Virus record (IMG/VR): IMGVR_UViG_3300042934_000594
Coordinates: 205,431-269,430 of that record
Reading direction: 5' to 3' (one strand)
DNA length: 64,000 nt
In this document: in pieces, positions 3,085 through 40,651 of the stretch
Numbering within the stretch: position 1 is the first letter of the stretch
How the letters are laid out: each line of letters starts with the position of its first letter
Position numbers and translations under genes: made by a program
Notes under the pieces: generated by a model
The model's database searches: none
What the model was told of the DNA's origin: nothing
Seen by the model: the letters and a program-made list of their open reading frames with translations, nothing else

Positions 3085-4875
3085 TTACTTACCGATGCGC
3101 GACCGCAGGATTTTCATCTTGATGTCATCGCCCTTGTCTTCTTCGCTGGGCACTTCAACCGGTTCAGCCGCTTGCGCCACTTCCCCGTCCGCAGGTGCAC
3201 CCAGACCGCTTTCAACGTTGTCCAGTGCTTGCACAGCGTCAGCGTTTTCCACGGTCACTTCCGTTTGCTCGCTGCCGGCTTCTGCTTCACCCGTCTCGGC
3301 TGCCTGAGCGGCGGCCAAGGCGGCGGTGTCTTCCAGCTCTTGCGTCTCATTGGAGATGACGCCTTCGCCTTCCACCGGAACCGACTGCGATTGACCGTTG
3401 TCGACCGCATTGCCCAGTGCTGGGTTGATGAACGGTACGAACGGCACGGCCTGGATTTGTGCAGCCAACCAATCGCCCCCAATGGCCACCAGCGCCACAG
3501 CGGCCAGCGCCCGGTTGTCGTCGCCCCCGTGGATCTTGCTGGCCTTGTCCATTTCCATCAAGAACTCTTGATAGATCGGGTTAGGGAAGTACGCCTCACA
3601 TACCAGCTTGGTGACCACGGCGTAGATGTTGTCGAACATCGCATCCGGACACTGTTGCAGGCTGTTACGCAGACTTTGCATCAGCTCGTTGATCTGAATC
3701 TGTGGCAGGATACTCGCCACGTCCTTATTAGGGGACGACATGACGTTGAGCAGTGTCTTGCGACGATTGCGCACAGCGTCATCGGCTTGGGCCTGGCAGA
3801 TCAGCGGGTAGACCTGCAACCACTTCTTGAGGAACACATCGGCGTGTTGCGCGAAGTCTTCCACACGGGTCACGGACGGATTGAGGATCGCCCCGCCCAG
3901 CAGCACTTGCACATCGTTGCCTTGCTCGATCCAGGCACCGTACAGATCGCCGTTAGCAACGACCTCTACCGTACGACGACCAATGGGGTCGTTACCGTCA
4001 GACCGCAGCACCAGCACGTTGCGTTGCAGCTGAGCCACACGGCGGCCGTAGGCACCGAGCAGGGCAGCACCGAACAGCTCGTGCAGGTGCATCATGGCGT
4101 TGGCCCATTCTTCCAACTCCACCGATTCACCGGTGACGTCCGCTGGGTTCTGCGCCATGTGACCGACCAAGCAGTAGGCCAACAGCAACTCGTCCACCGA
4201 GAACGGCAGACGGTGGCGTTGCAGCATGCTCAGCGACAGGGCGTCCAATGCACGCACACTGAACAACTGTTGCCAGACCGAGGCGATGGTCTCAGCACCG
4301 ACTTTCAGTAGCCACTCGGTGACCTGAGGCGGGTCCAGGTGTGGGTTGTTGTTGGCCACCATCTCGATGACCTGCTCAGCCGAAGCCTGCGGCAGGATGA
4401 ACGAGCGGTAGGACGGGCGCTGTTGCACGGTGGTGTAACGGCTTTGCAGGTGGTTCACCAGACGCGGTTCGTCATGCACCGGGTCGTAGTTGAACACGCT
4501 GATTTCGATCTTCGGCTTGACCACATCACGCTGACGTTCATCGAACGCTGCGCAGTAGGCCAACACCGCAGGACGAATGACGTTGCGCGAGTTGTGCAGG
4601 ATCGCATTCAACCCGTTGGCCATCAGACCGGAAAGACGGTCCACGACATCGCCGTCTTCAGGCGTTGGTTCAGCGTTGGCTTCTTCGAAGTCTTCCTGGG
4701 CCACCTGCATGACTTGCTCAGTCAGAGGGCGTTGATCGCCCTCCACTGGGTTGGCGTACAGGCCCGCCATGGTGGCGAGTGGGAAGGACGGTTCTTTAAC
4801 CGCCAGCACCATGCCAGACTCAGTCAGGGTTTGAGCCAGAGGAGCCACAGCGGCCAGGGTAGTTTGTTGGTACAT
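3085..4875 (-). CDS. conserved jumbo-phage (likely virion) protein with acidic C-terminal tail (gp177 position)
   Basis: AAGGAG before ATG4875; E/A-rich C-terminus; synteny. Confidence 0.7.
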   Translation of the reverse strand: MYQQTTLAAVAPLAQTLTESGMVLAVKEPSFPLATMAGLYANPVEGDQRPLTEQVMQVAQEDFEEANAEPTPEDGDVVDRLSGLMANGLNAILHNSRNVIRPAVLAYCAAFDERQRDVVKPKIEISVFNYDPVHDEPRLVNHLQSRYTTVQQRPSYRSFILPQASAEQVIEMVANNNPHLDPPQVTEWLLKVGAETIASVWQQLFSVRALDALSLSMLQRHRLPFSVDELLLAYCLVGHMAQNPADVTGESVELEEWANAMMHLHELFGAALLGAYGRRVAQLQRNVLVLRSDGNDPIGRRTVEVVANGDLYGAWIEQGNDVQVLLGGAILNPSVTRVEDFAQHADVFLKKWLQVYPLICQAQADDAVRNRRKTLLNVMSSPNKDVASILPQIQINELMQSLRNSLQQCPDAMFDNIYAVVTKLVCEAYFPNPIYQEFLMEMDKASKIHGGDDNRALAAVALVAIGGDWLAAQIQAVPFVPFINPALGNAVDNGQSQSVPVEGEGVISNETQELEDTAALAAAQAAETGEAEAGSEQTEVTVENADAVQALDNVESGLGAPADGEVAQAAEPVEVPSEEDKGDDIKMKILRSRIGK

Positions 4876-5089: not shown

Positions 5090-8000
5090 TTGCGGTTCCT
5101 CGGTAAACAGCTGGGACATGTTGAGACAGGAGCCACAACAGGATGTTGGTGGTGCCTGACAATTTAGGTGCGTTGACCATTCGAGCCTCGACCGACGTGT
5201 TGCCGAACTTGGCGTCTAGCGCAATACCCGACTCAGTGGCGTTGGTTCCCGAGAACACCCGGGAGATCACCGTCTTCATCTGGTTGCCCATTACGGCTTT
5301 GTCGCCGACGCCCATGGCGACGTCGTGGTCAATGTAGATGCGAATGGCCACGGTGTCTGGATCCAAGGCCTTACCGCTGACGCGGAAGCTGGTGTCCACT
5401 TCACCGGTGAATGCCGGTTTGCCTTGAGCACGGGAGCTGGTCTTGCGTTCCTTGTCCGATTGCGCTGCAATCGCTTGCAGGTTTTCAGACATGTCCTCAA
5501 AATCGCCGTGGTAGAACACTTCGATCTTGGCCACATCCCCAACGACTTTTGCCCGTGGGGTGGACTGGGACAGGCGGCGCAAGGTGTCCAATGCCGCGCC
5601 CCCAAAGAGCACGTTATTGGCCGTCTCAGGGTCTTCAATCGTACATAGAATTGTTTCCAAGTCTACGTGATCGCCAACCTGCACCAAGCCATGCACCGTT
5701 TGGTCAAACCGAACCTGGATGGTTTTGACTTCGGTGGTCTGGGTATTGAGCTTCTTCGCCATGCTTTCAGAGATGGCCGAACCGTCTTCAAATGTTTCGA
5801 TATCGTCGATCATGGCCACAAAGCCCATGACCCCAGCCTTGACGATCACCTTCCCTGGACTCATGCGATCGGGGGTGAAGAACTTGCGGTTGTAGGCCAG
5901 TGTGTCCCCATGACGAATACGGTCACCGGCTTTAAGGTCGGTGATGACATCGTGTGGGTACGTGGTCCCTGCTGCATTCCCGTGAACCTTACCCAAGGCC
6001 ACCCGCGTTTCAGACCCGTCGGCATAGCGCACGGTGACCGCGTGCTTGTTGACCGAGATCACCTCACCGTCTTGCTCTGCGCACGTCGCAAAGGTGGCGG
6101 TGGTGCGTTGGGCGATAATCTGCTCATACCCGGTGCGCAGTGGGGTGGCGGTATAGCCGTCTGCTGAGACGCCCTGAGCCTGCTGGATCGCAATGAAGTT
6201 GATACGCTTCATGTCGTCGTGGTCAGCACACGGGGCGTTCAAGGCCGAGGCGGAGAACAGTTTGGCAGCACCGTCACGCTCTTTGTCAAACGGACGGGTG
6301 AAACCGCGCATGTTCTTCAAGTTCGCATCAGGCGCTGCGTAGGCAATCACCCCCACGTCACCCGAGTCCACGGTGGATTCAGACACCACCCCCTTATCGG
6401 ATTCGTGGAAGATACGCGTGCGCTCCACCATCGACTGCCCACCCCGACCGCCATCACCCCGGAACGTCATGCGTTCCTGTTCACGCAGGTTCTGGAACGG
6501 GTTGGACTCCTCGGTCATACCGGCCGATGGATCCTGCACGATCTTCATCCACACCGCGTGCGGGTTGAGCTCAACGGCATGGTCCCCGGATGCCGAACGG
6601 TTGTTAAAGCTTTTCACCGAACGGGAGAGTTCACCGTAGACCATCCCCGCAAAACGCTCGTAACCCCGGTAGCGCATGAACGCACCGTCCACTTCCTCAG
6701 GACTGTAGTCGGTCATCAACAACTCAACCGCACGCAACACCAGAGGACCGAACTCGGTCGGCTCACCCATCTCTTCGAGCATGCCGCGGGTGATCGGGTC
6801 CATCCACGCTTTAAACAGCGCGTCGATCTCACGCAAATAACGCACGCCTAGGTCGTTGTCTTCCAAGATACGGAAGTAGACGTCCTTGCGGTCAAAGTCC
6901 CACACCGAGTACTGCTTCAAGGTGCGGTGATAACGGTTCAAGCCGTTGAGCACCAGCGTGGCCCGGTAGTCCAACTTGGAGAACACCAACACCTCATCCT
7001 GGAAGGTCAGTGCATAGTCATCGGCCCCCATCTGGATGCGCTCGCCACGGCGATGGCGCGAGACTTCACAACCCAGTCGACGGATCAACTCCGTCAGGCC
7101 TGAGGCGTAACCCAAGACCAGACCGACTGGCAACACCTTGTTGGCCACGGTCATCTCAGCCGCTTCCACCGGTGCCCCGTTGGTGTCAATCCCCAAGATA
7201 TCGGGCAACGTGCCCAATACTTCCAACCCTTCGTCGGTGTGCAGGTACAGCGCGTTGTTGGTGTCCATCAGCACCAGTTGCTTACCGTTGTGCGCGATCG
7301 CTACTTGGGTGGGTGTTTCGATGGTGTGCACGTCCAACTTCAGGGCCGTGTCAAAGAACTCCGCCCGGCGCTTGTGGTCCAGGAAGAACACGTACTCACC
7401 GGCTTGGAAGGACACGAAGCGCTTGGCCAGCAACGTATAGAAGCGGGGCAATTGCAACGACATGTCAAACACACTGGAGAACCGCACGTCACTGATCGTG
7501 GCGTCCTGAGGGTCCAGACCCCGACGGGTGATGTTCTTGCTGATGAAGTTGTCAAAGTCGTTAACCGCACGACCCGAACGGTCCACGAAGGTTTTGTTGT
7601 AGTAAGAGGTCAAGGCGACTCGCGTCGGGTTGATCTTACGGATGGGTTGGTCAGCGCGCTGAAGGCCGTACTTGTAGGTCACCCCGTTAGAGACAAAGCG
7701 TCCATCGTCATCGAGCACCGGTAGGCGAAAGCGCAGGGTCGATTGACGCCCGCGCAATGGCTTGACCGTTACCGTGTGGATCTGGTAATGGTTCATCGCA
7801 TCGCGAACGGTTTCGATCTGATAGTCCTTGACGGCTACCCCTTGCTGCTGGATCGCTGCCAAGGTGACGTTGAGCACGTCCTTGGCCATCAGTTTACGGA
7901 TGTACTTGGTCTGGATGGCCTTAAGGTTCGACGAGAGCATGGACTTGTCGAAGATCGTGTCGGCATCGGGGAACTTGACTTCTTCAGGCAGCGTCAGGTC

Positions 8001-17100: not shown

Positions 17101-18779
17101 AAGGAATGTCTGCCATCGGTAAGGTGGGTGTAGCCAATGCGTTGATTGCCGCGACCAGCGACTACAATGACGACAAGGTGTCGGTCTGGAAGGTGCCTAG
17201 CATTCTTCTGCCGACTGCGCCTGAGCAGGTGATGTTGGACCTGGCCAAGGCTGACTTGAAGGCATTGCAGGATGAAGCCGACAAGGTCAAACTCAATACC
17301 CCAACCCAATCGGGCGCTGCGCAAAACGCGGCGGCTAATGGTGGGAGTGCGGCCATGGTCGCAGGGGCTGAGATGGCCGGCAGTAAGTCGGGGGCTGAGT
17401 CAGGGGGCTTCCTGAACGGGGTGAACAACTTCGTAGCCGGTGTTGAGGACTCGATCTCCAATGCAGCGTCCAAGGTAGGGGATTCTATCTCCAGTGCTGC
17501 CTCGGGTGCCAAGAACACCGTTAAAGGGTGGTTGGGGATGGACGACAACAAGCCGTCGACACCAGGAGGCACCATTGGCGGTGCGGGTAACGTTACGGCG
17601 ATGGCCAAGGGTAATGGCGGTAGCTGGGAGAGTGTGCCGATGCCAACGGCCAAGACGCGGGCAGGTTGTATGCCTTCGTTCTTGAAGATCCAGGACCTGT
17701 CGGGGATGGACGCTAACCTGTTGGCCACGTTCGCCTCGATTGAGTCGAACTTCAACTGGGAAGTTAAAGCCTCGACGTCGTCCGCCACAGGTTGGTTCCA
17801 GTTCATCAACGCGACCTGGGACTACATCTTGAAGTTAGCCGGTGGTAAATACGGTTGCCCTCAGGATGACGGTGCACGCTCCTTGCGTAAAGACCCACGG
17901 ATCAACGGTTTGATGGGGGCCGAGTACATTAAGCTCAGTTACGAGACGCTGTCCAAAGGCTTAGGCCGGGCTCCAACGGACACCGACTTGTACATGGCGC
18001 ACTTCCTCGGTCCAGGCACAGCGGTGAAGTTCCTGAAAATGGACAAAAACACCGATGCTGTGAACGCCTTCCCGCAACAGGCAGGTGCCAACAAATCGAT
18101 CTTCTTCAAGAAGGGTGGTTCGCACAACACCTGTGGAGAGGTCTACGCCATCATGGACGCCAAGGTGGCCAAGCACCGCGGTGCAGGCGGGACATCGGTG
18201 ACCAAGCAAGTCTTGCCCGGTGACACCGATCCGGTAGCAGCTGCTGAAGCGCAAGCTAAGGCCACTGCCGCCAGTGCAGCAGATGGGATTCAGCAGACCC
18301 CTGGTTTGCCGAACGCTGCCAACGATCCGTCTGCCGCAGCACCAAACCTCAGCCAAGCCACCAACGCTACGGTCAACCCGTTGAATGCCCAAGCCGCTAC
18401 CGGCACTGCCGGCACGCAAGGCACCTCGGGGGCGCCTAACGCACCGGTGGGTTCAGGTCAGGACGATCCCACCCTGCAAGCGTCGCAGAACGCTCAGATG
18501 CAACAAGCTCAAGCGCAAGACAAAACGCGCGCGGCGCAAGTCCAAGACCAGCAAGCTGCAAGCAAGTCGGCCATGGACATTCAAAGCAAGCAGCTTGATG
18601 AGCTTGTGGAGATGAAAGGGTATCTGAAGACGATTGCTGACAACATGGGACTGCTCAAACCTTCGGGGACGAGTCAGGTTGCACCCGCGTCGTCTGGCAA
18701 TGCTATAGACAACTCTGCACCGCAGCGTACTGATCGCAGTGTCGGCCAAGGCCGTCCACCGCTTCAGATGACTCGCTAA
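11169..18779 (+). CDS. giant tail-associated lytic transglycosylase (phiKZ gp181-like)
   Basis: 2536 aa; C-terminal SLT motifs FASIESNFN, SSATGWFQFINATW, LYMAHFLG; central hydrophobic segment; synteny. Confidence 0.9.
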   Translation: MATKKTKPTNKPMKLEPLDLGNLDDFLDDNPNPEIKKGGALRDLRLGFKKGFLEQTKVKTLMRSFLRTGIPDGYSRAFGAIDDAKRTADQIYQDVKQTNAADFDLIAEKAESLLPKLKGRLNDKHYQKIADSIASKREDFKYLARQPRNAAERARMQQMAQRQADEQKIQAELFSESESNADARFQAERAERGIRDKVSSARFNSIAQNMGIIADAASSEKAYRDQIGYTLQRKGVELQFRSYFALRDLVKYAETSLQVNKEAYEAIVRNTGLPDHLKSTSAEMVNFTGKRAAAKYAVDKLPDFLAQFMPQIQANLTGMARQGMSSLGMAMGAGDGMDLGQLKNKKWELLGQGLGALGGNYAKSKVMPFVSRKTKPHLERLSNKYLGGGHDLANYYMNNASSSLQDWTQDYENSVGGKGILQDFLRMVVPQYSLNNQLKEGGYHTIDKQAAFNQLTQRSITEIIPGYLSRLLQEVRMIRTGSDDVERETFDITKGKFTGMKNALKNQQDRIITTQQRTAVSGALNDALSKFDEQGELSPEARAALSERILRDSATNGRFDPGQYANAAGYRHDTAQTTTDELRKFFANKFELDANGKTVRNAANNGKLNQYSDAFLNVRNVTGDPRTEIKRLFGSGNHEMLRELGLVINENGMDRINYDKVWELYRTDVPGGPGGGGPGGGGPGGPGGGPGGPGNGPGGPGGPGDVFDPNNPPPPGSNTIRILRDKVKQAEDAAKRRLGGLRDQAADRGFDRAYLGGLAAKVKGKMPAFNTDAVLDRIRSIKMPDVDRTKLLAMIGGLQLPNMPPVNKQMLTQMLSSVRMPTVDRQALLAMLPDAGQAKLQFAGMTNRFTPRQPLALPHLDALRERGGAMMPSGLPSFNMPGLPGFQMPTFNLQGLPSKASLGEHLSKLGDRLPKVDLDMIRDTASRLPKLDKKELAVYGALGRAKGQEVIKKLLGAGEQGMACIKGLLESGMVTGESMYQVATDPKLVDDVTSQAIALGSSLRSQAQNALGSDPVSKLQLKLAEGKDVVVGKAGAAAEVVNDLYVKGTNELAIRAADLEAGNLIDATSKQVITKLEDIKGTVIDKAGNVRVTAAQLGRGLVDAYGEVKALVPFKGAMAWAGKQYAAAAGAYWTWLAGNFQGKNALMGTQGVQDLYLPGRKEPVLLARDIEAGLYINQETNRPIESLDDITGPVVDQNAQVVLTSADIEKGLYTAQGGKVKLSRFKILSGVIKAGLSPATTLIKAQLWLAKKVATIAIKSVMVLDAYLPGVKEPLLRSSVLKNGGYFYADGRPIRSFDDLRDGVFDERGNELVSAEEIPHLINRDGSKHTAAKRRSLVRKWGKKILTAPFKAVGRGYMKLTKGYYNWLGSKFSGGRKGKAGQPLSPELQAIIAKRGGKGTDPIGTPTDALLANIAQTLDRRLPKEAPTEGSWQQQLAEREALEAQARAKKAAKDPRDPKGKKEKGLLERLAAKLGAGKAAGEEEEGGGIGDINIGEGEEKDKPRSRRDRARDRLRRRKEAKYGRFRKGILRGGRAVMNSGVGRAAGSLGMNAARLGATALLGEGAVAALGTGASMLGGGLASAGGALATGATAIAGILSAPVVLGVLGVAAVGAGAYWLYSRDRDSSGDFREFRLDQYGIGNDSTSRALKILNLEAALEASASKGAEPQLNISAENASKLVDIVGLDMNDPQKLAEFGKWVDLRFKPVFFTYLRAMKTMGLNCKVNELDDKLLPEQKAGFLELVRMSTGADSPYAFTASPFADGDPLTVTAEQVTKHYEELKAKFAKDAPSKDTTKTAETEKSTGAAAVAAGAAAVGATGAVNAAAAASGVPAPSNVIPFVAKGTGPSTGVMGKLTAGTASVTAFTGNKVSALQAIRMRAYGLFGLSVSRVSALMSIEEIVFAGVQTSTGGLSEFTGDQETFLDDAATALGFNIADPASQERVDFINWVQYRFMPVVLTYCSAVKNQDASIQMARVEQGMSAIGKVGVANALIAATSDYNDDKVSVWKVPSILLPTAPEQVMLDLAKADLKALQDEADKVKLNTPTQSGAAQNAAANGGSAAMVAGAEMAGSKSGAESGGFLNGVNNFVAGVEDSISNAASKVGDSISSAASGAKNTVKGWLGMDDNKPSTPGGTIGGAGNVTAMAKGNGGSWESVPMPTAKTRAGCMPSFLKIQDLSGMDANLLATFASIESNFNWEVKASTSSATGWFQFINATWDYILKLAGGKYGCPQDDGARSLRKDPRINGLMGAEYIKLSYETLSKGLGRAPTDTDLYMAHFLGPGTAVKFLKMDKNTDAVNAFPQQAGANKSIFFKKGGSHNTCGEVYAIMDAKVAKHRGAGGTSVTKQVLPGDTDPVAAAEAQAKATAASAADGIQQTPGLPNAANDPSAAAPNLSQATNATVNPLNAQAATGTAGTQGTSGAPNAPVGSGQDDPTLQASQNAQMQQAQAQDKTRAAQVQDQQAASKSAMDIQSKQLDELVEMKGYLKTIADNMGLLKPSGTSQVAPASSGNAIDNSAPQRTDRSVGQGRPPLQMTR
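13174..13280 (+). repeat. Gly-Pro low-complexity coding repeat
   Basis: PGGPGGGGPGGGGPGGPGGGPGGPGNGPGGPGGPG. Confidence 0.85.
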
Positions 18780-18787
18780 CTGGCACC

Positions 18788-18818
18788 GGAGTCCCCTTCG
18801 TGGGGACTCCTTTATTTT
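18788..18818 (+). terminator. intrinsic terminator
   Basis: GGAGTCCCC-TTCGT-GGGGACTCC followed by TTTATTTT. Confidence 0.85.
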
Positions 18819-18830
18819 CGGGAACTCACT

Positions 18831-20813
18831 ATGGCTACAATCGATCGGGGTCCGATCTGGCTACGGCATGCGTTTCTGACTCCGACCTCGGAAGACCAGA
18901 CGCAGTACGGGTCTGAAACCAAACGTCGTTTCGCAACCTCCGCCGCCTTTAAGTTCACCAACACCACGTTGGGGGGCAACTGGTGTATTAACAACCCACC
19001 ACAATTTACCCGTTGGGCTGACATTCGCCAACCGGGTCGTGGACGGGATGAATCCAAGGACAGTCGCAAGTGGGGGATGGGGCGTTACTACTCCGAGGCG
19101 ATTGATGATCCACGGCAGATGGTGACGATGTCCTTCGGGGTACCGCGCTTCTCCAACTGGTCCAGCTTCTTTGTTAACTTCTACGACCGTAACTCGGCAC
19201 TGCTCGCTAACACCGGCCGGGTGAACGATCTGTGGTACAACCTGGGCAACGTCGGGGGCTTTATTGTCTCCCTGCCGATCCAGCCGATTATCATGGGGGT
19301 GATGGGCGTCAGTCGGGTGCTGTCGTTCTTGGGCAAGTCCTCACCCAGCAAATGGATGTACTTTAAACCGTCGATGCACGTGTACTGGTCCACGGTCAAC
19401 ACCATTGCCAACGAAATGGCGATCAACATGGGACTGATCCCTAAGGTGCTGCCTGAAGCGCAGCGTCCTCTGGAGGATCCGGGTCAGCGCGTGACGTTGG
19501 ACGACATCAAGCGTTTCCATGAAATCATCCCAGACATCTTCCGGGCTGAGGGCGGGGTGGACGTCATGTCGCTCGCCGGTAAGACGCAGCGCATGTCCGA
19601 CGCCTCTCAGCGCAACTTGCAGGCCATGGCCGATAAGGCCGCAACGCTCGCCGACCTTAAGGCCAGCATTGAGAAGTACCAGCAAGAAGCGGTGACTGAC
19701 CCCAACCCGGGGTACTCGGCCAGGCAGTACATGGAGGAGTACATCAAGAACGCCGACACGGTCACCGACGGTGGGCCTTCCACGGAAAGCTTCTCCAGTT
19801 GGAGCGAACTCACCAAGGTCTCGGACTTTATCATTGCGGCGCAGCGCGACGCCATGCAGTTCGTTTCCTTCCGGGTCAAGCACAATGGGTCCCTGTCCGA
19901 ATCCTGGAGCAGCACCACCAAAGCTTCTGAGGTGGCGCAGCAGATCAACACCAAAGTCTCGGCAGGCCGGTCGGTGTCGTTTAACACGATGAACGGTGGG
20001 ATCGTTCCTGGGATGTCCGATGTTCTGGACAAAGTGCAGTCTTACGCAGCCGGTGCGTTGGACTCGGTGAACCTGGGCGGTCTGGCGGTCCTGACGGGTA
20101 CGGCGTTTATTGACGTGCCTGAGATGTGGGAGTCGGCATCAGCCACCCTGCCTTCGGCCAGCTACACCGTTACCCTGGACAGCCCGTACGGCAACAAGAT
20201 CTCTCGGTTCATGAACCTTATGATCCCGATCGCCATGTTGCTTGCAGGAGGGCTACCGTTGTCGGCAGGTCGGTCGGCTTACACCTCGCCATTCCTGTGC
20301 CAGATCTACCACCAAGGGCGTGTACAGCGGCAACTGGGGATCATCGATGAGATCACCCTGACCCGCGGTACTGGCAATGTGGGTTGGAACGCTGAACATG
20401 ATATGCTCGGCGCTGAACTCACCTTCAACGTCAAGGATCTGTCTAGCATCATGCACATGGGTGTCAAAGGCGGATACGCCTCGGCATCTTGGCTGGGTAC
20501 AGCGACCCGTGCTGCGGCTGCTACCGTGGGAGAGGCGGTAGGGGGTAGCACCGGTCTGAACACCGCTGTCGCGCTGACTGATCCATCCGTGTACGACGAA
20601 TCGAGTCTGTTCAATGATTACATTGCCACGATCACGTCGTTGTCCTTGGCTGACGCCTTCTACGCTGGGAAGCGCTTGAATGTCAACCTGACCCGTTCCG
20701 TGCAAGCTTTCAAATCCTGGCGCAGTCCTTCGAACCTACTGAGTTGGGGCTTGGACGGCGGGACCGCACGGTTCATCTCGGCATTTGCCAACACCACTGA
20801 CCGTCTTGAATAG
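18831..20813 (+). CDS. virion tail/baseplate structural protein (phiKZ gp182-like)
   Basis: 660 aa directly after the gp181-like gene; FTNTTLGGN, GMGRYYSEAIDD motifs. Confidence 0.75.
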   Translation: MATIDRGPIWLRHAFLTPTSEDQTQYGSETKRRFATSAAFKFTNTTLGGNWCINNPPQFTRWADIRQPGRGRDESKDSRKWGMGRYYSEAIDDPRQMVTMSFGVPRFSNWSSFFVNFYDRNSALLANTGRVNDLWYNLGNVGGFIVSLPIQPIIMGVMGVSRVLSFLGKSSPSKWMYFKPSMHVYWSTVNTIANEMAINMGLIPKVLPEAQRPLEDPGQRVTLDDIKRFHEIIPDIFRAEGGVDVMSLAGKTQRMSDASQRNLQAMADKAATLADLKASIEKYQQEAVTDPNPGYSARQYMEEYIKNADTVTDGGPSTESFSSWSELTKVSDFIIAAQRDAMQFVSFRVKHNGSLSESWSSTTKASEVAQQINTKVSAGRSVSFNTMNGGIVPGMSDVLDKVQSYAAGALDSVNLGGLAVLTGTAFIDVPEMWESASATLPSASYTVTLDSPYGNKISRFMNLMIPIAMLLAGGLPLSAGRSAYTSPFLCQIYHQGRVQRQLGIIDEITLTRGTGNVGWNAEHDMLGAELTFNVKDLSSIMHMGVKGGYASASWLGTATRAAAATVGEAVGGSTGLNTAVALTDPSVYDESSLFNDYIATITSLSLADAFYAGKRLNVNLTRSVQAFKSWRSPSNLLSWGLDGGTARFISAFANTTDRLE

Positions 20814-37152: not shown

Positions 37153-37347
37153 GCTTAGGAGGAAACTACTGAGGGACTTTTACTGACTCGATTAGTAGTA
37201 TGTTCTTTCACCCCGAATCCCCTGAGTAGTGAGCTCGTTTTGACTCTGTCAAACTTGCACATTAAAGGGGGGTTTGGGGGGTTTCTTAAACCAGCGAGAG
37301 GTGAGTGTAACGAACCTCTCTACGTATATACCCGAAGGGGAATACAC

Positions 37348-37758
37348 ATGAGTCTTGTAGACATACAGGTTGAGGGACATCAAGTGAGTCTCGAGGAAGA
37401 GACGATCAGGGAGATCATAGAGGCTAAGGGACCTAACGGTGAGTGGGACATCTACCACCTGGACAAGGTCATCCTTCAATACCAGAACGCTCAGACCGAG
37501 ACTGAGCGTGAACAGTTCCTGTATGAGATCAAAACCCGCACCGACAATGTCATCCGTACCCAATCAGGCTCTCCTACCGGCAGCATCGAAAGTGCTGTGC
37601 ATTCAGCCGTGGAGCAAGTGCTTCGAGTGATTGACGGCAATGGGGACGACCGACCGGGGTATAACCTGATTCCACGCGAATACGTCGGTCAACCCGAGCC
37701 CCAGTACGACATCGCCGGGGCATTGAGCGATGCCTACTTCACGATGATCAACACCTAA
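37348..37758 (+). CDS. INT-module family protein 1
   Basis: Ends VLRVIDG..PGYNLIP..DIAGALSDAYFTMINT; AAGGGG before ATG37348. Confidence 0.75.
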   Translation: MSLVDIQVEGHQVSLEEETIREIIEAKGPNGEWDIYHLDKVILQYQNAQTETEREQFLYEIKTRTDNVIRTQSGSPTGSIESAVHSAVEQVLRVIDGNGDDRPGYNLIPREYVGQPEPQYDIAGALSDAYFTMINT

Positions 37759-37767
37759 GGAGTTGTT

Positions 37768-38013
37768 ATGGCAGTAGCGCCCGATGTCACCCAACTGGTA
37801 GCGGCGTTAGACCCCGATCATCGCAGTAAGCTTGAGGCGTTTCTGACCGATTCCCGCTCAGGCTACTTAAAGCGGTTGGCCAGTGGTATGGATCACAAAC
37901 AACTCAGTAGCCGTAAACTGTGGCGCGACTTGAATGATCGTGCCCAAGCGATGGTTACTGAGAACCTTCTCATGCTCCAACAACAGTGGTTAAAAGGCTA
38001 TGGTTATCTCTGA
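37768..38013 (+). CDS. hypothetical protein
   Basis: AAGGAG RBS. Confidence 0.65.
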   Translation: MAVAPDVTQLVAALDPDHRSKLEAFLTDSRSGYLKRLASGMDHKQLSSRKLWRDLNDRAQAMVTENLLMLQQQWLKGYGYL

Positions 38014-38710
38014 CAAGGCTGCGGTGGTGTCCGACGCCAAGCAACTGCATACCCTCATGCACCAACAGCATGAGTACTACATGTCGGCGCCGGACAGTGA
38101 AACGTTTGAGTCGGTTGATGAGTTCATCGCCAACTGGAAAGACTACGACATCGACCTCAATCACATCGTACGCTGGGACTTTAGCGTTCAGGACAGTGAG
38201 TACCCGGAAGAGACCAGAGACTACGGCCCTAAAGGCTGTACCTACGCCAACATCGTGTGGGTGATGCCTCGCAAGGGGTATTTGTTTGGCAACATCATCA
38301 AGGACGTCAAGGTCCACGAGACGCCGCGCTTGCTGGCGTTCCTACAGAAGCACTGGGGCTACATGCAGAAACAGTGGGCGCCGGTGCCTGACGTGATCTA
38401 CGACCCGGTCACCAGTGCACGCGGCGTGTTCCTGGACGCCGTCACCCGCATCACGGACTTTCAAACCACGCCAGTGTTTGACACCGACAAAGAGGTGACC
38501 TACACCGCCCAATCGGTGGACGAGCTGATTCACGCACGGGTCCATCAGACCGCGGTAGATATCTTGTCGCTGGTCGATACGGGCGTGGCGGGTGTCAACG
38601 AGGGCTACCACCTGATTCCGGTGGGGGACCTCAAAGCTGACGACCTCAACCACGTCAATGACCTCGCTGGGGAATTGGCAACCTGCTATTTCGACATGAT
38701 CAATACCTAG
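38000..38710 (+). CDS. INT-module family protein 2
   Basis: N-terminal DIDLNHIVRWD..PRKG domain; ends DLAGELATCYFDMINT. Confidence 0.8.
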   Translation: MVISDKAAVVSDAKQLHTLMHQQHEYYMSAPDSETFESVDEFIANWKDYDIDLNHIVRWDFSVQDSEYPEETRDYGPKGCTYANIVWVMPRKGYLFGNIIKDVKVHETPRLLAFLQKHWGYMQKQWAPVPDVIYDPVTSARGVFLDAVTRITDFQTTPVFDTDKEVTYTAQSVDELIHARVHQTAVDILSLVDTGVAGVNEGYHLIPVGDLKADDLNHVNDLAGELATCYFDMINT

Positions 38711-38719
38711 GGGGTTACC

Positions 38720-39046
38720 GTGGGCGATCTACTGCAAGTCCAAGCACGGGGGCAAACTCACACCATCAACTCCGTCGAAATCGGGTCACCGGAACTTGAC
38801 ACCGGGGGCTATAAAAACTACATCTGGAGTTACAACAGCAAGCACGGGCAGGGTGACGGCACTATCCGAGCCGTGTTTCTGGTATCGCCGGACAAAGAAG
38901 CCGCGGACAAGCTTCTGGTCCACACCCTGGAGAAACGCACCGCCAAGCACTGCATTGCCGGCTATGAAGGAGGCACCTGGTACGCCCGTAAAGAAGGTCC
39001 TTCCTTCTACGACGACGAGCCGGTCCTCAACGTCTGCTGGACGTAA
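38720..39046 (+). CDS. hypothetical protein
   Basis: AGGGGG RBS with GTG start. Confidence 0.65.
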   Translation: MGDLLQVQARGQTHTINSVEIGSPELDTGGYKNYIWSYNSKHGQGDGTIRAVFLVSPDKEAADKLLVHTLEKRTAKHCIAGYEGGTWYARKEGPSFYDDEPVLNVCWT

Positions 39047-39051
39047 GGGCC

Positions 39052-39486
39052 ATGGACCCTCGCCTGGTAATGGCCATCGCGGTGGACGACAGTGACCTGG
39101 ACCACGAGGAAGCCAAGTTCCACTTTCGGGTCTACGGTGGGACCTGCTACCCCCATCGGGATACCTTAGCGGGTATCCCGCCCTGGGAAGTCAGCAGCAC
39201 GGGTGAGGTAAAAGCGCATCCAGGTGGGCATTACCTGTTGCGCACGATCTGTCACGTGGTACAGAAGGTCCTGGATGAACACCCTCGCCAGTTCACCAAG
39301 GAGCAAGCACTGCTCTTTACCCATCAAGTCACGGCGCCCTTGTATTTCGAACAGAACCACCCGGACCTGGCGAACTACATCGCTACCATGGCCCTGCGTA
39401 TTTGTTTACTGCTGCCCACTAAGGTATGGCGTATTCAACTACTGACCGTCCGTAAACGCATGCTGTACGTGCTACTTAACGACTAG
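39052..39486 (+). CDS. hypothetical protein
   Basis: AAGGG RBS; operon context. Confidence 0.65.
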   Translation: MDPRLVMAIAVDDSDLDHEEAKFHFRVYGGTCYPHRDTLAGIPPWEVSSTGEVKAHPGGHYLLRTICHVVQKVLDEHPRQFTKEQALLFTHQVTAPLYFEQNHPDLANYIATMALRICLLLPTKVWRIQLLTVRKRMLYVLLND

Positions 39487-39494
39487 GAACTGCA

Positions 39495-39821
39495 ATGACC
39501 AATTCTCGCACCCTCCACGACATCCTTCCAGCGGACCTCATCAAGGTCAACGCACTGCTGCAAGGCGTTAACCAGGAAGAGCTGGTGGAAAAAGCCCAGG
39601 CGGTTACCAAGCGCCTGACGCGCAAGTTCAGCAAGGACACTGCCGTGGCCCCCGCTGAGATCGTCCAGACTACTGTAGTCGCCATGCTCAAGGTTCTGGA
39701 CGGCACCGGCGGCCACCCGGGTTACATCGTCCTGGATCGGGAAAACCGTTTGAACGAGCCGCAGGCTAACGATTTGAGCGGTAAGTTGGTCGAGACGTAC
39801 TTTGACTTGATTAACGATTAA
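39495..39821 (+). CDS. INT-module family protein 3
   Basis: Ends MLKVLDG..PGYIV..DLSGKLVETYFDLIND. Confidence 0.75.
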   Translation: MTNSRTLHDILPADLIKVNALLQGVNQEELVEKAQAVTKRLTRKFSKDTAVAPAEIVQTTVVAMLKVLDGTGGHPGYIVLDRENRLNEPQANDLSGKLVETYFDLIND

Positions 39822-39830
39822 TCATGTTAT

Positions 39831-39984
39831 GTACAGGTGTATTGTAGTTGACACCTAGGAGGTGATCCAGCCTGCTGTTGTTACCCCGGGGTTATTTGCA
39901 CTCGCTGTGAAGCGACTTCGTAGCCCCAACGACTGCCTGTACGACCCCCGTCACCCCCTCCCCTTACCGGGAGGGGTTTTATTT
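39831..39984 (+). ncRNA. candidate sRNA with a 16-nt complement to the 16S rRNA 3' end
   Basis: TATG start; closing stem 39831-38/39935-42; AGGAGGTGATCCAGCC at 39857-72; terminator at 39955-84. Confidence 0.6.
39955..39984 (+). terminator. intrinsic terminator
   Basis: CCCCTCCC-CTTACC-GGGAGGGG followed by TTTTATTT. Confidence 0.8.
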
Positions 39985-40006
39985 CGTTTACCCCACTGAG
40001 GTTTTT

Positions 40007-40651
40007 ATGGAAGACAATTTCTGCATACAGCACGTGCCCGACTCTGAATGGCAAGCGAACCGTCAATGGTTGTTGACCACCCCCGAAGGAAAAACCATGC
40101 GGGTGAATGTAGGGCCTGAACGGCGCCCTACTGACGTGCGTGTGCATGCCAACCCGATCGTGCCCGACGGTAACGTTCACCATGGCATCCCGGCCATGCT
40201 CACCAGCAGCGGCAGTATGTTGGAACTGCGCCATCCCGAGCATCCTGAATTCAGCCACGGTGTAGCGGGCATGAACATCTGGTTCAAGTACGACGCCCTG
40301 GTGAAGGCCACGGAGCAGGGCATATTTAACCTGATGCCCATGATCCCCTTCACGCATCGCATGATGATGTTGGACGGACTGACTTGGCGACAAGCTGAGC
40401 ACTTTACCGACGAGACCAGCTATGACCCCGTTGCGGTCTGTGCGTTTCTGTTCATCCCGTACAAATCCTGCGAAGGGCAATTGCATTTCCCCAAAGCGTT
40501 GCAAAGCGACAAATCACGCGCCCTTACTGTGACGATCGATGAGGAGCTGCGCCAGATCATCGACGACGAACGGGTGCAGATGTACCCCATCAACCCCGAT
40601 CAACTCAAGCACATGACGGTCAACGTGGATCAAGCGGTGAGGGTTCTCTGA
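40007..40651 (+). CDS. hypothetical protein
   Basis: GAGGT RBS, 214 aa. Confidence 0.75.
   Translation: MEDNFCIQHVPDSEWQANRQWLLTTPEGKTMRVNVGPERRPTDVRVHANPIVPDGNVHHGIPAMLTSSGSMLELRHPEHPEFSHGVAGMNIWFKYDALVKATEQGIFNLMPMIPFTHRMMMLDGLTWRQAEHFTDETSYDPVAVCAFLFIPYKSCEGQLHFPKALQSDKSRALTVTIDEELRQIIDDERVQMYPINPDQLKHMTVNVDQAVRVL

What the first reader, a model, noticed from the sequence alone, without database searches (positions are those of the whole stretch)
39831..39984. Candidate phage sRNA carrying a perfect 16-nt complement of the 16S rRNA 3' end (possible ribosome decoy)
Seen: the 185-bp gap starts with TATG (39828-31). Its ends pair (GTACAGGT 39831-38 with GCCTGTAC 39935-42, extendable by GTAGTTG/CAACGAC), it has an inner GGGGTTA/TAGCCCC arm, and it ends in a strong terminator. 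It contains AGGAGGTGATCCAGCC (39857-72) with no ATG downstream before the terminator. Known: the 16S 3' end in Pseudomonas and many bacteria is GGCUGGAUCACCUCCUUA, so the match covers the anti-SD and runs into helix 45, far beyond a normal SD. A given 16-mer is expected about 3e-5 times in 128 kb of both strands. Alternative pairings (CACCT/AGGTG versus AGGTGT/ACACCT) could mask or expose the site, and a 9-codon ORF (MYRCIVVDT) ends with its TAG overlapping the motif. Inference: an RNA that captures or stores 30S subunits, blocks host SD-dependent initiation, or shields the anti-SD from defence nucleases.
Basis: partly seen in the sequence, partly recalled or inferred. Interest (0 to 1): 0.9.

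Follow-up and report, generated by a model that had tools for sequence, protein, structure and literature searches.

The report
Jumbo-phage small RNA matching ribosome's tail
The gap holds a real, previously unnamed small structured RNA gene shared by phiKZ and its Pseudomonas jumbo-phage relatives. Its one unchanging stretch is a 16-19-letter mirror image of the end of the ribosome's 16S RNA, so the phage probably uses it to grip the host's small ribosomal subunit.

Summary

- **What is in the window.** Window 39831-39984 (+) encodes a ~154-nt RNA. It starts at the G of an invariant TATG, which is the phiKZ nvRNAP late-promoter element with G as +1. It ends at an intrinsic terminator.
- **How widely it occurs.** I found 29 distinct homologues. 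They come from syntenic metagenomic relatives whose flanking proteins are only ~49% identical, from IMG/VR contigs, and from cultured Pseudomonas jumbo phages: phiKZ, PhiPA3, PA1C, 201phi2-1, Noxifer, Psa21, D6, RVTF4, Viktualia and pPa_SNUABM_DT01. At least 60 GenBank genomes carry it; nearly all leave it unannotated.
- **Structure.** All copies share a three-way junction (P1, P2, P3-P4 with a GNRA-type loop). Of 24 base pairs, 22 show compensatory changes, and 94.6% of cells are paired against about 30% in slid controls.
- **The motif.** The only invariant block is single-stranded: AGGRGGUGAUCCRG(Y). In all 27 aligned members checked (20 by script, 7 by eye) it forms 16-20 contiguous pairs, G·U included, with the 3' end of 16S rRNA. 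It usually reaches the last nucleotide.
- **What it is not.** It does not code for a protein, has no conserved start codon, and matches no Rfam family.
- **Function.** Binding of the 30S subunit or the 16S tail is inferred, not shown.

The parts
39828..39831 (+). TATG promoter element; G39831 is the predicted +1 and the first base of P1
   Evidence: TATG sits at the 5' edge of P1 in 20 of the 27 aligned members; the phiKZ subgroup has TATAG or a TAG-type variant. The phiKZ late-promoter consensus is TATG with the G as the start site (PMC4666361). Use of this promoter in this phage is inferred.
39831..39838 (+). P1, 5' strand (GTACAGGT)
   Evidence: Pairs with 39935-39942. 100% of cells are paired in 27 sequences, and 5 of 7 pairs show double changes, e.g. 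AGCAAGG/CCUUGCU in phiKZ and UAGACAAGG/CCUUGUCUA in D6.
39836..39855 (+). P2 hairpin (GGTGT 39836-40 / ACACC 39851-55; overlaps the top of P1 by 3 nt in this phage)
   Evidence: Block fold gives -5.0 kcal/mol. In the family P2 covaries (CAGU/ACUG, CAAUG/CAUUG with UUCG loops, CUAAGC/GCUUAG), with 4 of 4 pairs showing double changes. The model aligns the window's own P2 poorly.
39857..39872 (+). Invariant single-stranded motif AGGAGGTGATCCAGCC, complementary to 16S rRNA nt 1525-1540
   Evidence: 12 of 16 columns are 100% identical in 27 homologues; mean identity is 0.93, against 0.59 for other unpaired columns. 16-18 contiguous pairs with the 16S tail in each of the first 20 members. Lies in junction J2/3 of the consensus structure.
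39877..39887 (+). Linker with GTTGTT (pairs with AACGAC 39928-33, window clade only) and the pyrimidine tract TTACCCC
   Evidence: MFE structure. An (A/U)(A/C)CC tract is semi-conserved in the family and could pair with GGU(GA) of the motif. Not tested for covariation.
39888..39927 (+). P3-P4 arm: P3 GGGGTTA (39888-94) / TAGCCCC (39921-27); P4 TCGCT (39902-06), loop GTGA, AGCGA (39911-15)
   Evidence: P3 has 6 of 6 pairs and P4 has 7 of 7 pairs with double changes. Loops are GNRA-like (GUGA, GAGA, GGGA).
39935..39942 (+). P1, 3' strand (GCCTGTAC)
39955..39984 (+). Intrinsic terminator (stem-loop 39955-76, then TTTTATTT)
   Evidence: My script found a GC-rich hairpin plus T-run in 28 of 29 homologues, usually ending in TTTATGCC.

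Best explanation
Window 39831-39984 is the gene for an independently transcribed, structured small RNA of about 154 nt. It belongs to a family confined, as far as tested, to phiKZ-like jumbo phages of Pseudomonas and their metagenomic relatives.

**Anatomy.** The RNA starts at the G of a TATG phage-polymerase promoter element and folds into a three-way junction (P1, P2, P3-P4). Between P2 and P3 it displays an invariant single-stranded segment, (UA/UG)AGGRGGUGAUCCRGYN. It ends at an intrinsic terminator.

**Proposed mechanism.** The segment base-pairs with the last 16-20 nucleotides of host 16S rRNA: the whole anti-Shine-Dalgarno tail plus the first 4-5 nucleotides of the 3' strand of helix 45. 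The RNA would therefore act as an ORF-less 'super Shine-Dalgarno'. It would occupy the mRNA-docking site of free 30S subunits, or of 16S that is not yet or no longer fully folded, and so change which RNAs those subunits can initiate on.

**What is shown and what is inferred.**
- Shown: the family, its fold, the invariance of the motif and its complementarity to 16S.
- Inferred: transcription in vivo, binding to 30S or 16S, and the consequence of that binding.
For: **1. Conservation far above the neighbourhood.** Relatives found by synteny alone (L090, L091, L093; flanking protein about 49% identical) keep the element nearly base for base.

**2. Homologues found without using the motif all carry it.**
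- A scan with a pattern made only of the closing stem.
- BLAST from those hits.
- A covariance model run at the locus next to the SNF2 helicase.
- The carriers include phiKZ (AF399011 212,852-212,971 +), PhiPA3, PA1C, 201phi2-1, Noxifer, Psa21, D6, RVTF4, Viktualia and DT01.

**3. RNA structure.**
- 94.6% of 632 cells are paired, against 28-35% with slid partners.
- 22 of 24 pairs have compensatory changes.
- 0 of 500 shuffles reach the observed values.
- RNAalifold recovers the same helices independently.
- The window RNA folds with z = -3.85.

**4. The motif.**
- 12 of 16 columns are invariant, while paired columns average 67% identity.
- There are 16-18 contiguous pairs with the 16S tail in each of the first 20 members; 15 of these 20 reach A1542.
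- phiKZ, PA1C and Psa21 extend to 19-20 pairs.
- Variation is A/G, A/G, C/U and C/U/A. All but one allele keep a wobble pair with 16S.

**5. An autonomous unit.**
- The immediate neighbours differ between clades.
- In phiKZ, D6 and Psa21 a separate promoter-like motif follows the terminator.
- TATG with G as +1 is the phiKZ nvRNAP element (PMC4666361).

**6. Not coding.**
- The GTG-frame ORF varies from 4 to 53 codons.
- Close relatives differ by indels that are not multiples of three.
- No start codon is conserved.

**7. Precedent from established knowledge, not tested here.** Synthetic oligonucleotides complementary to the 16S 3' end block initiation (Taniguchi & Weissmann 1978; Jayaraman et al. 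1981).
Against: - **No expression or binding data were accessible.** The phiKZ Grad-seq and dRNA-seq studies sampled only early infection and do not list this RNA. The supplementary ncRNA tables of the ONT-cappable-seq papers are not held.
- **Helix 45 must open.** Pairing beyond G1530 needs the base of helix 45 to open in a mature 30S subunit.
- **The motif is only partly accessible in predictions.** Mean unpaired probability is 0.3-0.5, and GGU(GA) can pair with a downstream ACC tract or form a 3-bp mini-hairpin.
- **A decoy would also hit phage mRNAs.** From the examples I looked at, phage genes use ordinary SD sequences, so a pure decoy would compete with them too.
- **The wobble pattern is weak evidence on its own.** 4 of 5 alternative alleles keep pairing, which gives P about 0.05-0.2 depending on transition bias.
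- **No host-matched test exists yet.** No homologue was found in phiKZ-like phages of other genera, so there is no case of phage-host co-variation.
Confidence: 0.55

Rival explanations
1. It is a cis-acting leader, that is, a conditional-termination or riboswitch-like element. The three-way junction would be a sensor, and the terminator straight after P1 would be its expression platform controlling the downstream gene. The short RNA would then be the prematurely terminated product.
For: - The layout of junction, closing stem and terminator immediately after it is that of many riboswitches.
- ONT-cappable-seq found many phiKZ 5'UTR RNAs made by premature termination, including 17 candidates in phiKZ (PMC10914365).
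- The junction nucleotides are the most conserved part.
Against: - The gene immediately downstream differs between clades: family F18 in the window, F23 in L090, F25 or F7 elsewhere, gp204 in phiKZ and gp305 in 201phi2-1.
- I saw no conserved anti-terminator pairing.
- In phiKZ, D6 and Psa21 a separate promoter-like motif lies between the terminator and the next gene.
- This reading does not explain why the conserved core equals the complement of the 16S 3' end.
- In nucleus-forming phages ribosomes are excluded from the site of transcription (established knowledge for phiKZ).
Confidence: 0.15
2. It is a STAB-SD-type stabiliser. The SD-like motif would recruit a 30S subunit only to protect this RNA, or read-through mRNA, from 5'-end-dependent decay, with no effect on the ribosome pool.
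For: - It is an ORF-less SD-like sequence near the 5' end of a transcript.
- This is a known mechanism in Bacillus (cryIIIA STAB-SD; established knowledge).
- It also relies on pairing with 16S, so it fits the motif.
Against: - 16-20 nt of invariant complementarity, reaching the last 16S nucleotide and entering helix 45, is far more than stabilisers need.
- The 5' end is already protected inside P1.
- A terminator separates the element from any mRNA.
- It leaves open what the stabilised RNA itself does.
Confidence: 0.1
3. The motif is conserved for an internal tertiary contact or for a protein partner, such as a phage RNA-binding protein. On this reading its match to 16S is incidental.
For: - Part of the motif can pair locally: GGR/UCC as a mini-hairpin, or GGU with a downstream ACC tract.
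- Invariant junction strands are typical of tertiary cores.
- The A-to-G change weakens the classic GGAGG.
Against: - By my own estimate, a conserved 16-mer would match some 16-nt stretch of rRNA by chance about once in a million, and here it matches exactly the functional 3' tail.
- The extensions in different clades (UAAGG or UGAGG at the 5' side, CCG or UCGU at the 3' side) continue the same 16S register.
Confidence: 0.1
4. It is simply the ribosome-binding site of a small ORF with a GTG, CTG or TTG start, or the match is a chance one.
For: - In the window a 45-codon GTG ORF (39862-39999) and a CTG/TTG-started 12-codon frame follow the motif.
- Elsewhere in IMG/VR the same 16-mer does serve as an SD placed directly against an ATG.
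Against: - The ORF in the GTG frame ranges from 4 to 53 codons across homologues.
- No start codon is conserved.
- Indels between close relatives break the reading frame.
- The helices covary as RNA.
- Chance is excluded by invariance of the motif core in all 29 distinct homologues.
Confidence: 0.03

Closest known systems
Shine-Dalgarno sequences and ORF-less SD 'stabilisers' (STAB-SD of Bacillus cryIIIA)
   Same: A purine-rich tract that pairs with the 3' tail of 16S rRNA. The STAB-SD type likewise has no start codon after it.
   Different: - Here the complementarity is 16-20 nt, against 4-9 nt.
- It reaches the terminal nucleotide and enters helix 45.
- It sits in the junction of a conserved three-way fold, in a terminated ~150-nt RNA rather than in an mRNA leader.
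6S RNA (a decoy that mimics an open promoter and sequesters RNA polymerase)
   Same: Only the concept: a small structured RNA that imitates the normal nucleic-acid ligand of a core machine and occupies its docking site.
   Different: The target, fold and sequence are all different, and there is no homology. Sequestration of ribosomes is not shown here.
Ribosome-associated ncRNAs, e.g. the Haloferax Val-tRNA fragment that binds the small subunit and blocks mRNA binding (PMC11009984)
   Same: A non-coding RNA that targets the small subunit and competes with mRNA.
   Different: The tRF is a processed host tRNA piece that binds at the decoding site. This RNA is a dedicated viral gene predicted to pair with the anti-SD tail.
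Published phiKZ and 201phi2-1 ncRNA candidates (sRNA005 / 'sRNAgp182'; 5'UTR-p40; 3'UTR-PHIKZ298; PHIKZ221 and PHIKZ302 leaders)
   Same: Small structured RNAs of the same phages, bounded by a phage promoter and an early terminator (PMC11512511, PMC10914365, PMC8545117).
   Different: - The loci differ. sRNA005 lies upstream of the gp182 homologue (window about 18.8 kb), whereas this RNA lies next to the SNF2 helicase gp203.
- I could not check whether this RNA is among the 17 unnamed phiKZ candidates, because the supplement is not held.
- None of the accessible texts mentions complementarity to 16S.
Synthetic antisense oligonucleotides against the 16S 3' end
   Same: The same target sequence. 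These oligonucleotides are known to block initiation-complex formation (established knowledge).
   Different: Those are artificial. This would be a natural, virus-encoded counterpart embedded in a folded RNA.

Membership tests
Any Rfam 15 family | Match to a curated covariance model | tested here: not met
   At E <= 10 the only hit overlapping the core element is a weak minus-strand one, Hrs1 (21.5 bits against a gathering score of 56.4); a weak plus-strand ClpQY_promoter hit (14.8 bits against 42) covers the terminator.
RBS of a protein-coding ORF | SD complementary to the 16S tail | tested here: met
   16 nt of complementarity.
RBS of a protein-coding ORF | A start codon 5-10 nt downstream and a conserved ORF | tested here: not met
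   No conserved start codon. The GTG-frame ORF spans 4-53 codons, and indels between relatives break the frame.
Structured non-coding RNA family | Helices kept through compensatory changes across homologues | tested here: met
   22 of 24 pairs have double changes; 94.6% of cells are paired against about 30% when slid; 0 of 500 shuffles reach this. RNAalifold agrees. Caveat: the alignment was fitted to the model.
Independent phiKZ-type transcription unit | A TATG promoter element with G as +1 at the 5' end | tested here: met
   TATG is invariant in the window's subgroup and TATAG in the phiKZ subgroup. The consensus is from PMC4666361. Actual promoter activity was not tested.
Independent phiKZ-type transcription unit | An intrinsic terminator at the 3' end | tested here: met
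   Found in 28 of 29 homologues.
Independent phiKZ-type transcription unit | A discrete transcript in infected cells | not testable with these tools
   The supplementary tables with phiKZ and 201phi2-1 ncRNA coordinates are not held. The published early-infection data sets do not list it.
Riboswitch / conditional-termination leader | A conserved sensor fold directly followed by a terminator | tested here: met
Riboswitch / conditional-termination leader | The same class of regulated gene downstream | tested here: not met
   The genes immediately downstream fall into different families. phiKZ has gp204 and 201phi2-1 has gp305.
Riboswitch / conditional-termination leader | A conserved alternative (anti-terminator) pairing | not tested
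   None was noticed by eye, and no systematic search was made.
phiKZ sRNAgp182 / 201phi2-1 sRNA005 family | Location in the 5'UTR of the gp182/gp277 tail-protein homologue | tested here: not met
   The homologue in the window is 18831-20813. In PhiPA3, gp214 follows gp213 after a 51-nt gap. The present RNA is about 21 kb away.
16S-tail-binding RNA (proposed new class) | Contiguous complementarity to the 16S 3' terminus kept in all members | tested here: met
16S-tail-binding RNA (proposed new class) | Physical binding to 30S subunits or to 16S rRNA | not testable with these tools
   Needs biochemistry or interactome data.

The most novel reading that the evidence does not exclude
The RNA would be a viral 'cap' for the ribosome's 16S 3' end.

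**How it would work.** It would pair from the very last nucleotide (A1542) through the anti-SD and into the base of helix 45, turning the single-stranded tail into a duplex with a fully paired 3' end. That would have one of two effects:
- It shields host 30S subunits, late in infection, from 3'-to-5' exonucleolytic ribosome breakdown of the RNase R type and from factors that act on the anti-SD region (for example RMF-type hibernation factors).
- It traps 16S whose helix 45 is not yet formed, and so shuts down new 30S assembly.

**Why it would be new.** Either way, this would be the first natural RNA known to act directly on the rRNA anti-Shine-Dalgarno tail.
Probability: 0.2. Interest if true: 0.95.

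Novelty: categorically new. Interest (0 to 1): 0.88.

Why it matters
phiKZ-like phages are the model for nucleus-forming viruses of bacteria, and how they take over host translation is an open question. So far only proteins such as gp014 have been implicated.

- **A ready-made probe.** A conserved phage RNA whose only invariant part mirrors the 16S anti-SD tail would be a compact, directly testable tool for studying that takeover.
- **A possible new class.** If it does bind 30S subunits, it would be the first natural RNA ligand of the anti-Shine-Dalgarno site, a counterpart for the ribosome of what 6S RNA is for RNA polymerase.
- **Easy to test.** phiKZ and PAO1 are standard laboratory strains, and the RNA is 100% identical over 186 nt in 44 sequenced phiKZ-like isolates.
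- **Annotation.** It also fills an unannotated gap in at least 60 GenBank genomes and provides a covariance model for annotating it.

Tried and rejected
**Searches that found nothing**
- Direct BLASTN of the window region, and tblastn of the downstream ORF, against GenBank phages gave no hit.
- PHROGs and Pfam searches of the flanking ORFs gave nothing useful.
- A homologue search with the 214-aa downstream protein found only the protein itself.
- The search for related loci with both flanking proteins returned only the source contig, IMGVR_UViG_3300042934_000594.

**Searches that were too loose or biased**
- The bare 16-mer across IMG/VR gave 87 stretches, mostly unrelated contexts. Three are 16S genes and one phage family uses it as an SD placed against an ATG. 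The 16-mer alone is therefore near my rough chance estimate.
- The first motif-plus-stem pattern was too loose.
- I then used a pattern built only from the closing stem, so that hits were not selected for the motif. The genome-contig scan with the same pattern gave no true members among the rows returned.

**Alignment**
- The MAFFT alignment A1 misaligned P2 and P3, and RNAalifold on it recovered only P1 and part of P4. I replaced it with model-guided alignments.

**Ideas considered and dropped**
- Extended antisense similarity beyond the motif, into the helix 45 loop. Some clades suggest it, but phiKZ, PhiPA3 and the DT01 clade lack it.
- Leu-rich leader-peptide attenuation (CTG CTG TTG TTA in the window). 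It is not conserved.
- A MITE or other mobile element with inverted ends. There is a single copy per genome and the internal helices covary.
- An RsmA/CsrA sponge. There is only one GGA, and none in the GGGGG variants.
- A homologue near the helicase in phiKZ-like phages of Erwinia, Burkholderia, Ralstonia, Klebsiella, Salmonella, Serratia and Vibrio. None was found within 4 kb.

**Literature**
- Searches found no description of this RNA or of any phage RNA aimed at the anti-SD.

Full report
**1.
- The window is the last 64 kb of IMG/VR contig IMGVR_UViG_3300042934_000594, which is 269,430 bp long.
- It is a phiKZ-like jumbo phage. It has split multisubunit RNA polymerase genes, and the tested beta subunit is 59% identical in protein to those of Pseudomonas phages of the PA1C group (56.6% to PhiPA3, 58.5% to Noxifer).
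- A 185-nt gap (39822-40006) lies between two + strand ORFs, 39495-39821 and 40007-40651.
  - TATG at 39828-31;
  - the closing stem GTACAGGT / GCCTGTAC (39831-38 / 39935-42);
  - the arm GGGGTTA / TAGCCCC (39888-94 / 39921-27), which encloses a TCGCT-GTGA-AGCGA hairpin;
  - AGGAGGTGATCCAGCC at 39857-72;
  - a terminator at 39955-84.
- The RNA 39828-39984 folds at -61.4 kcal/mol with z = -3.85 against shuffles.
- In rRNA-bearing contigs the same 16-mer continues into the 1492R primer region. This confirms that it is the complement of the 16S 3' end.

**2. The 16-mer alone is weak evidence.** In about 2.9 million viral contigs it occurs in 87 stretches, in what I read as roughly 25-30 unrelated contexts. 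By my rough estimate that is about what chance would give.

**3. Relatives decide the matter.**
- DNA and protein searches with the immediate neighbours failed.
- The 236-aa protein 1.1 kb upstream has homologues at 47-49% identity on long metagenomic contigs with the same gene order.
- At the matching position these contigs carry an element that is almost identical in its key blocks.
- Using only the closing stem as a search pattern, I found 11 more distinct members in IMG/VR, mostly on contigs of 160-280 kb. All of them carry the motif although it was not part of the query.
- BLAST from these hits, and covariance models R1 and R2, then located the RNA in cultured phages:
  - pPa_SNUABM_DT01, D6, RVTF4, Psa21, Noxifer, Viktualia, PhiPA3, PA1C and 201phi2-1;
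  - phiKZ itself, at AF399011 212,852-212,971 on the + strand, between the gp203 helicase and gp204.
- At least 60 GenBank Pseudomonas jumbo-phage records carry it, nearly always with nothing annotated there. In DT01 a spurious 40-aa CDS is annotated on the opposite strand.
- 44 phiKZ-like genomes are 100% identical over 186 nt.
- The ancestral position seems to be the divergent intergenic region next to the SNF2 helicase. The window clade has inserted a small family of paralogous genes between the two.

**4. It is a structured RNA and not a protein gene.**
- On the model-guided alignment of 27 distinct sequences, 94.6% of 632 pair cells are standard pairs, against 28-35% when partners are slid by 1-3 columns.
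- 22 of 24 pairs show changes on both sides.
- No shuffle out of 500 reaches the observed values.
- That alignment is fitted to the structure. However, single-sequence folds of the sub-blocks and RNAalifold recover the same helices.
- The helices are:
  - P1 (for example GUACAGG/CCUGUAC, AGCAAGG/CCUUGCU, UAGACAAGG/CCUUGUCUA);
  - P2 (often closed by a UUCG loop);
  - P3;
  - P4 (closed by GNRA-like loops).
- The ORF in the frame of the motif's GTG ranges from 4 to 53 codons. Close relatives differ by 1-3-nt indels, and no start codon is conserved.
- No Rfam family matches.

**5. The motif is the heart of the family.**
- Columns 61-76 of alignment A4 read AGGRGGUGAUCCRGYN.
- Twelve of these columns are invariant in all 27 sequences. 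Paired columns average 67% identity and other unpaired columns 59%.
- The motif lies in the junction between P2 and P3.
- Each of the first 20 members forms 16-18 contiguous pairs with the Pseudomonas-type 16S tail...GGCUGGAUCACCUCCUUA-3'. Fifteen of those 20 reach the terminal A1542 through UAAGG or UGAGG.
- phiKZ, PA1C and Psa21 extend at the other end to 19-20 pairs.
- The variable positions change by transitions that keep a G·U pair:
  - A/G opposite U1537 and U1528;
  - C/U opposite G1526 and G1525.
  - The one exception is an A at the last position in the DT01 clade.
- This pattern fits pairing with 16S but is statistically weak on its own. The weight rests on invariance and on exact register with the functional 3' end.
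- An apparent further antisense similarity towards the helix 45 loop appears only in some clades, and I dropped it.

**6. It is an autonomous unit.**
- The phiKZ late-promoter element is TATG with the G as start site (PMC4666361).
- Here that G is the first base of P1, so the 5' end of the RNA would be base-paired.
- The phiKZ, PhiPA3, D6 and Psa21 subgroup has TATAG preceded by an AAAATAC-like box, which resembles the phiKZ middle-promoter element.
- A hairpin plus T-run follows P1 in 28 of 29 members.
- The next gene differs between clades.
- In phiKZ, D6 and Psa21 a conserved 'aaatctatattac' motif, probably the next gene's own promoter, follows the terminator.
- All of this argues against a leader dedicated to one gene.

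**7. Mechanism.**
- *Shown:* the fold, the conservation and the complementarity.
- *Inferred:* the RNA is made in middle or late infection and reaches the cytoplasm. There it pairs with the 16S tail, as an mRNA's SD does, but with a far longer duplex (predicted -34 to -41 kcal/mol) and with no start codon. It would therefore occupy the docking site of 30S subunits.
- *Difficulties:*
  - Nucleotides 1525-1529 lie in helix 45 of the mature subunit.
  - The motif is partly masked in predicted ensembles.
  - Phage mRNAs use ordinary SD sequences, so a pure decoy would compete with them.
They also leave room for the rivals listed in this report.
- I put 0.55 on '16S-tail pairing is the function'. 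I put about 0.95 on 'a real, conserved, independently terminated structured RNA'.

**8. Comparison with what is known.**
- No accessible paper describes this RNA or any phage RNA aimed at the anti-SD.
- The published conserved jumbo-phage sRNA (sRNA005 / sRNAgp182) is at another locus.
- Early-infection dRNA-seq and Grad-seq would have missed a later RNA.
- The RNA may be among the 17 unnamed phiKZ 5'UTR candidates of Putzeys et al. 2024. I could not check, because the table is not held.
- The closest mechanistic relatives are SD and STAB-SD elements, 6S RNA as a concept, ribosome-associated ncRNAs, and synthetic anti-16S oligonucleotides.

**9. Verdict.**
- The finding is real and unusual.
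- The functional claims remain hypotheses.
- They can now be tested directly in the phiKZ/PAO1 laboratory system.

Noticed in passing
window 38000-38710 (+); homologue P0004 in L091 9339-10061: JGI labels the 240-aa homologue of this gene, which lies 1.1 kb upstream of the RNA, 'ribosomal protein S18'. Pfam gives no support (best E = 0.14, to an unrelated family). The label is probably spurious, but it is curious next to a 16S-directed RNA.
   Followed up: partly
window 37240-39821; L090 10001-11968: A small family of paralogous genes fills the space between the SNF2 helicase and the RNA in the window clade: 172 aa and 236 aa in the window, four copies in L090. In phiKZ, D6, Psa21, L343 and L059 the RNA directly adjoins the helicase.
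   Followed up: partly
L003 3350-3365, L014, L027-L029, L048, L063, L066, L081, L089: An unrelated family of IMG/VR phages has the same 16-mer placed directly against an ATG (GGGGGT-AGGAGGTGATCCAGCC-ATGAAGTAC). This is a 16-nt Shine-Dalgarno used as a real RBS.
   Followed up: partly
L010, L012, L013, L042, L045, L046, L074, L078 (e.g. L013 around 4181-4196, minus strand): In another unrelated phage family the 16-mer sits exactly where two alternative upstream sequences join a common downstream part. A CCGCTG...CAGCGG hairpin and a GGGAGGTG-ATG gene start follow it. This may be a module boundary or a standby site.
   Followed up: partly
window ~18779-18831 (upstream of 18831-20813, the phiKZ gp182 homologue): This is the position of the published conserved jumbo-phage sRNA (201phi2-1 sRNA005 / phiKZ sRNAgp182). 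It is a different locus from the present RNA.
   Followed up: no
L486 ~6700-6725 (minus strand; phiKZ), L484, L059, L483, L482 (3' of the terminator): The motif 'aaatctatattac' is conserved downstream of the RNA's terminator in phiKZ, D6, RVTF4 and Psa21. It is probably the promoter of the next gene.
   Followed up: no
GenBank records of D6, RVTF4 and the PA1C group (PA1C, PS119XW, BRkr, phiHQ, HPP-Temi): BLAST reports two matching places per record for the element plus its flank. A second partial copy, or a repeated terminator or promoter, may exist.
   Followed up: no
L489-L496 (phiKZ-like phages of Erwinia, Burkholderia, Ralstonia, Klebsiella, Salmonella, Serratia and Vibrio): No family member, and no complement of the 16S tail of 10 nt or more, lies within 4 kb of the helicase. 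Ea35-70 and SA002 nevertheless have unexplained ~290-nt gaps at the same position.
   Followed up: partly
MW735835.1 229,921-230,043 (L480 4031-4153, minus strand): In pPa_SNUABM_DT01 a 40-aa 'hypothetical protein' (PA10_00263) is annotated on the strand opposite the RNA. This is very probably a mis-annotation.
   Followed up: partly
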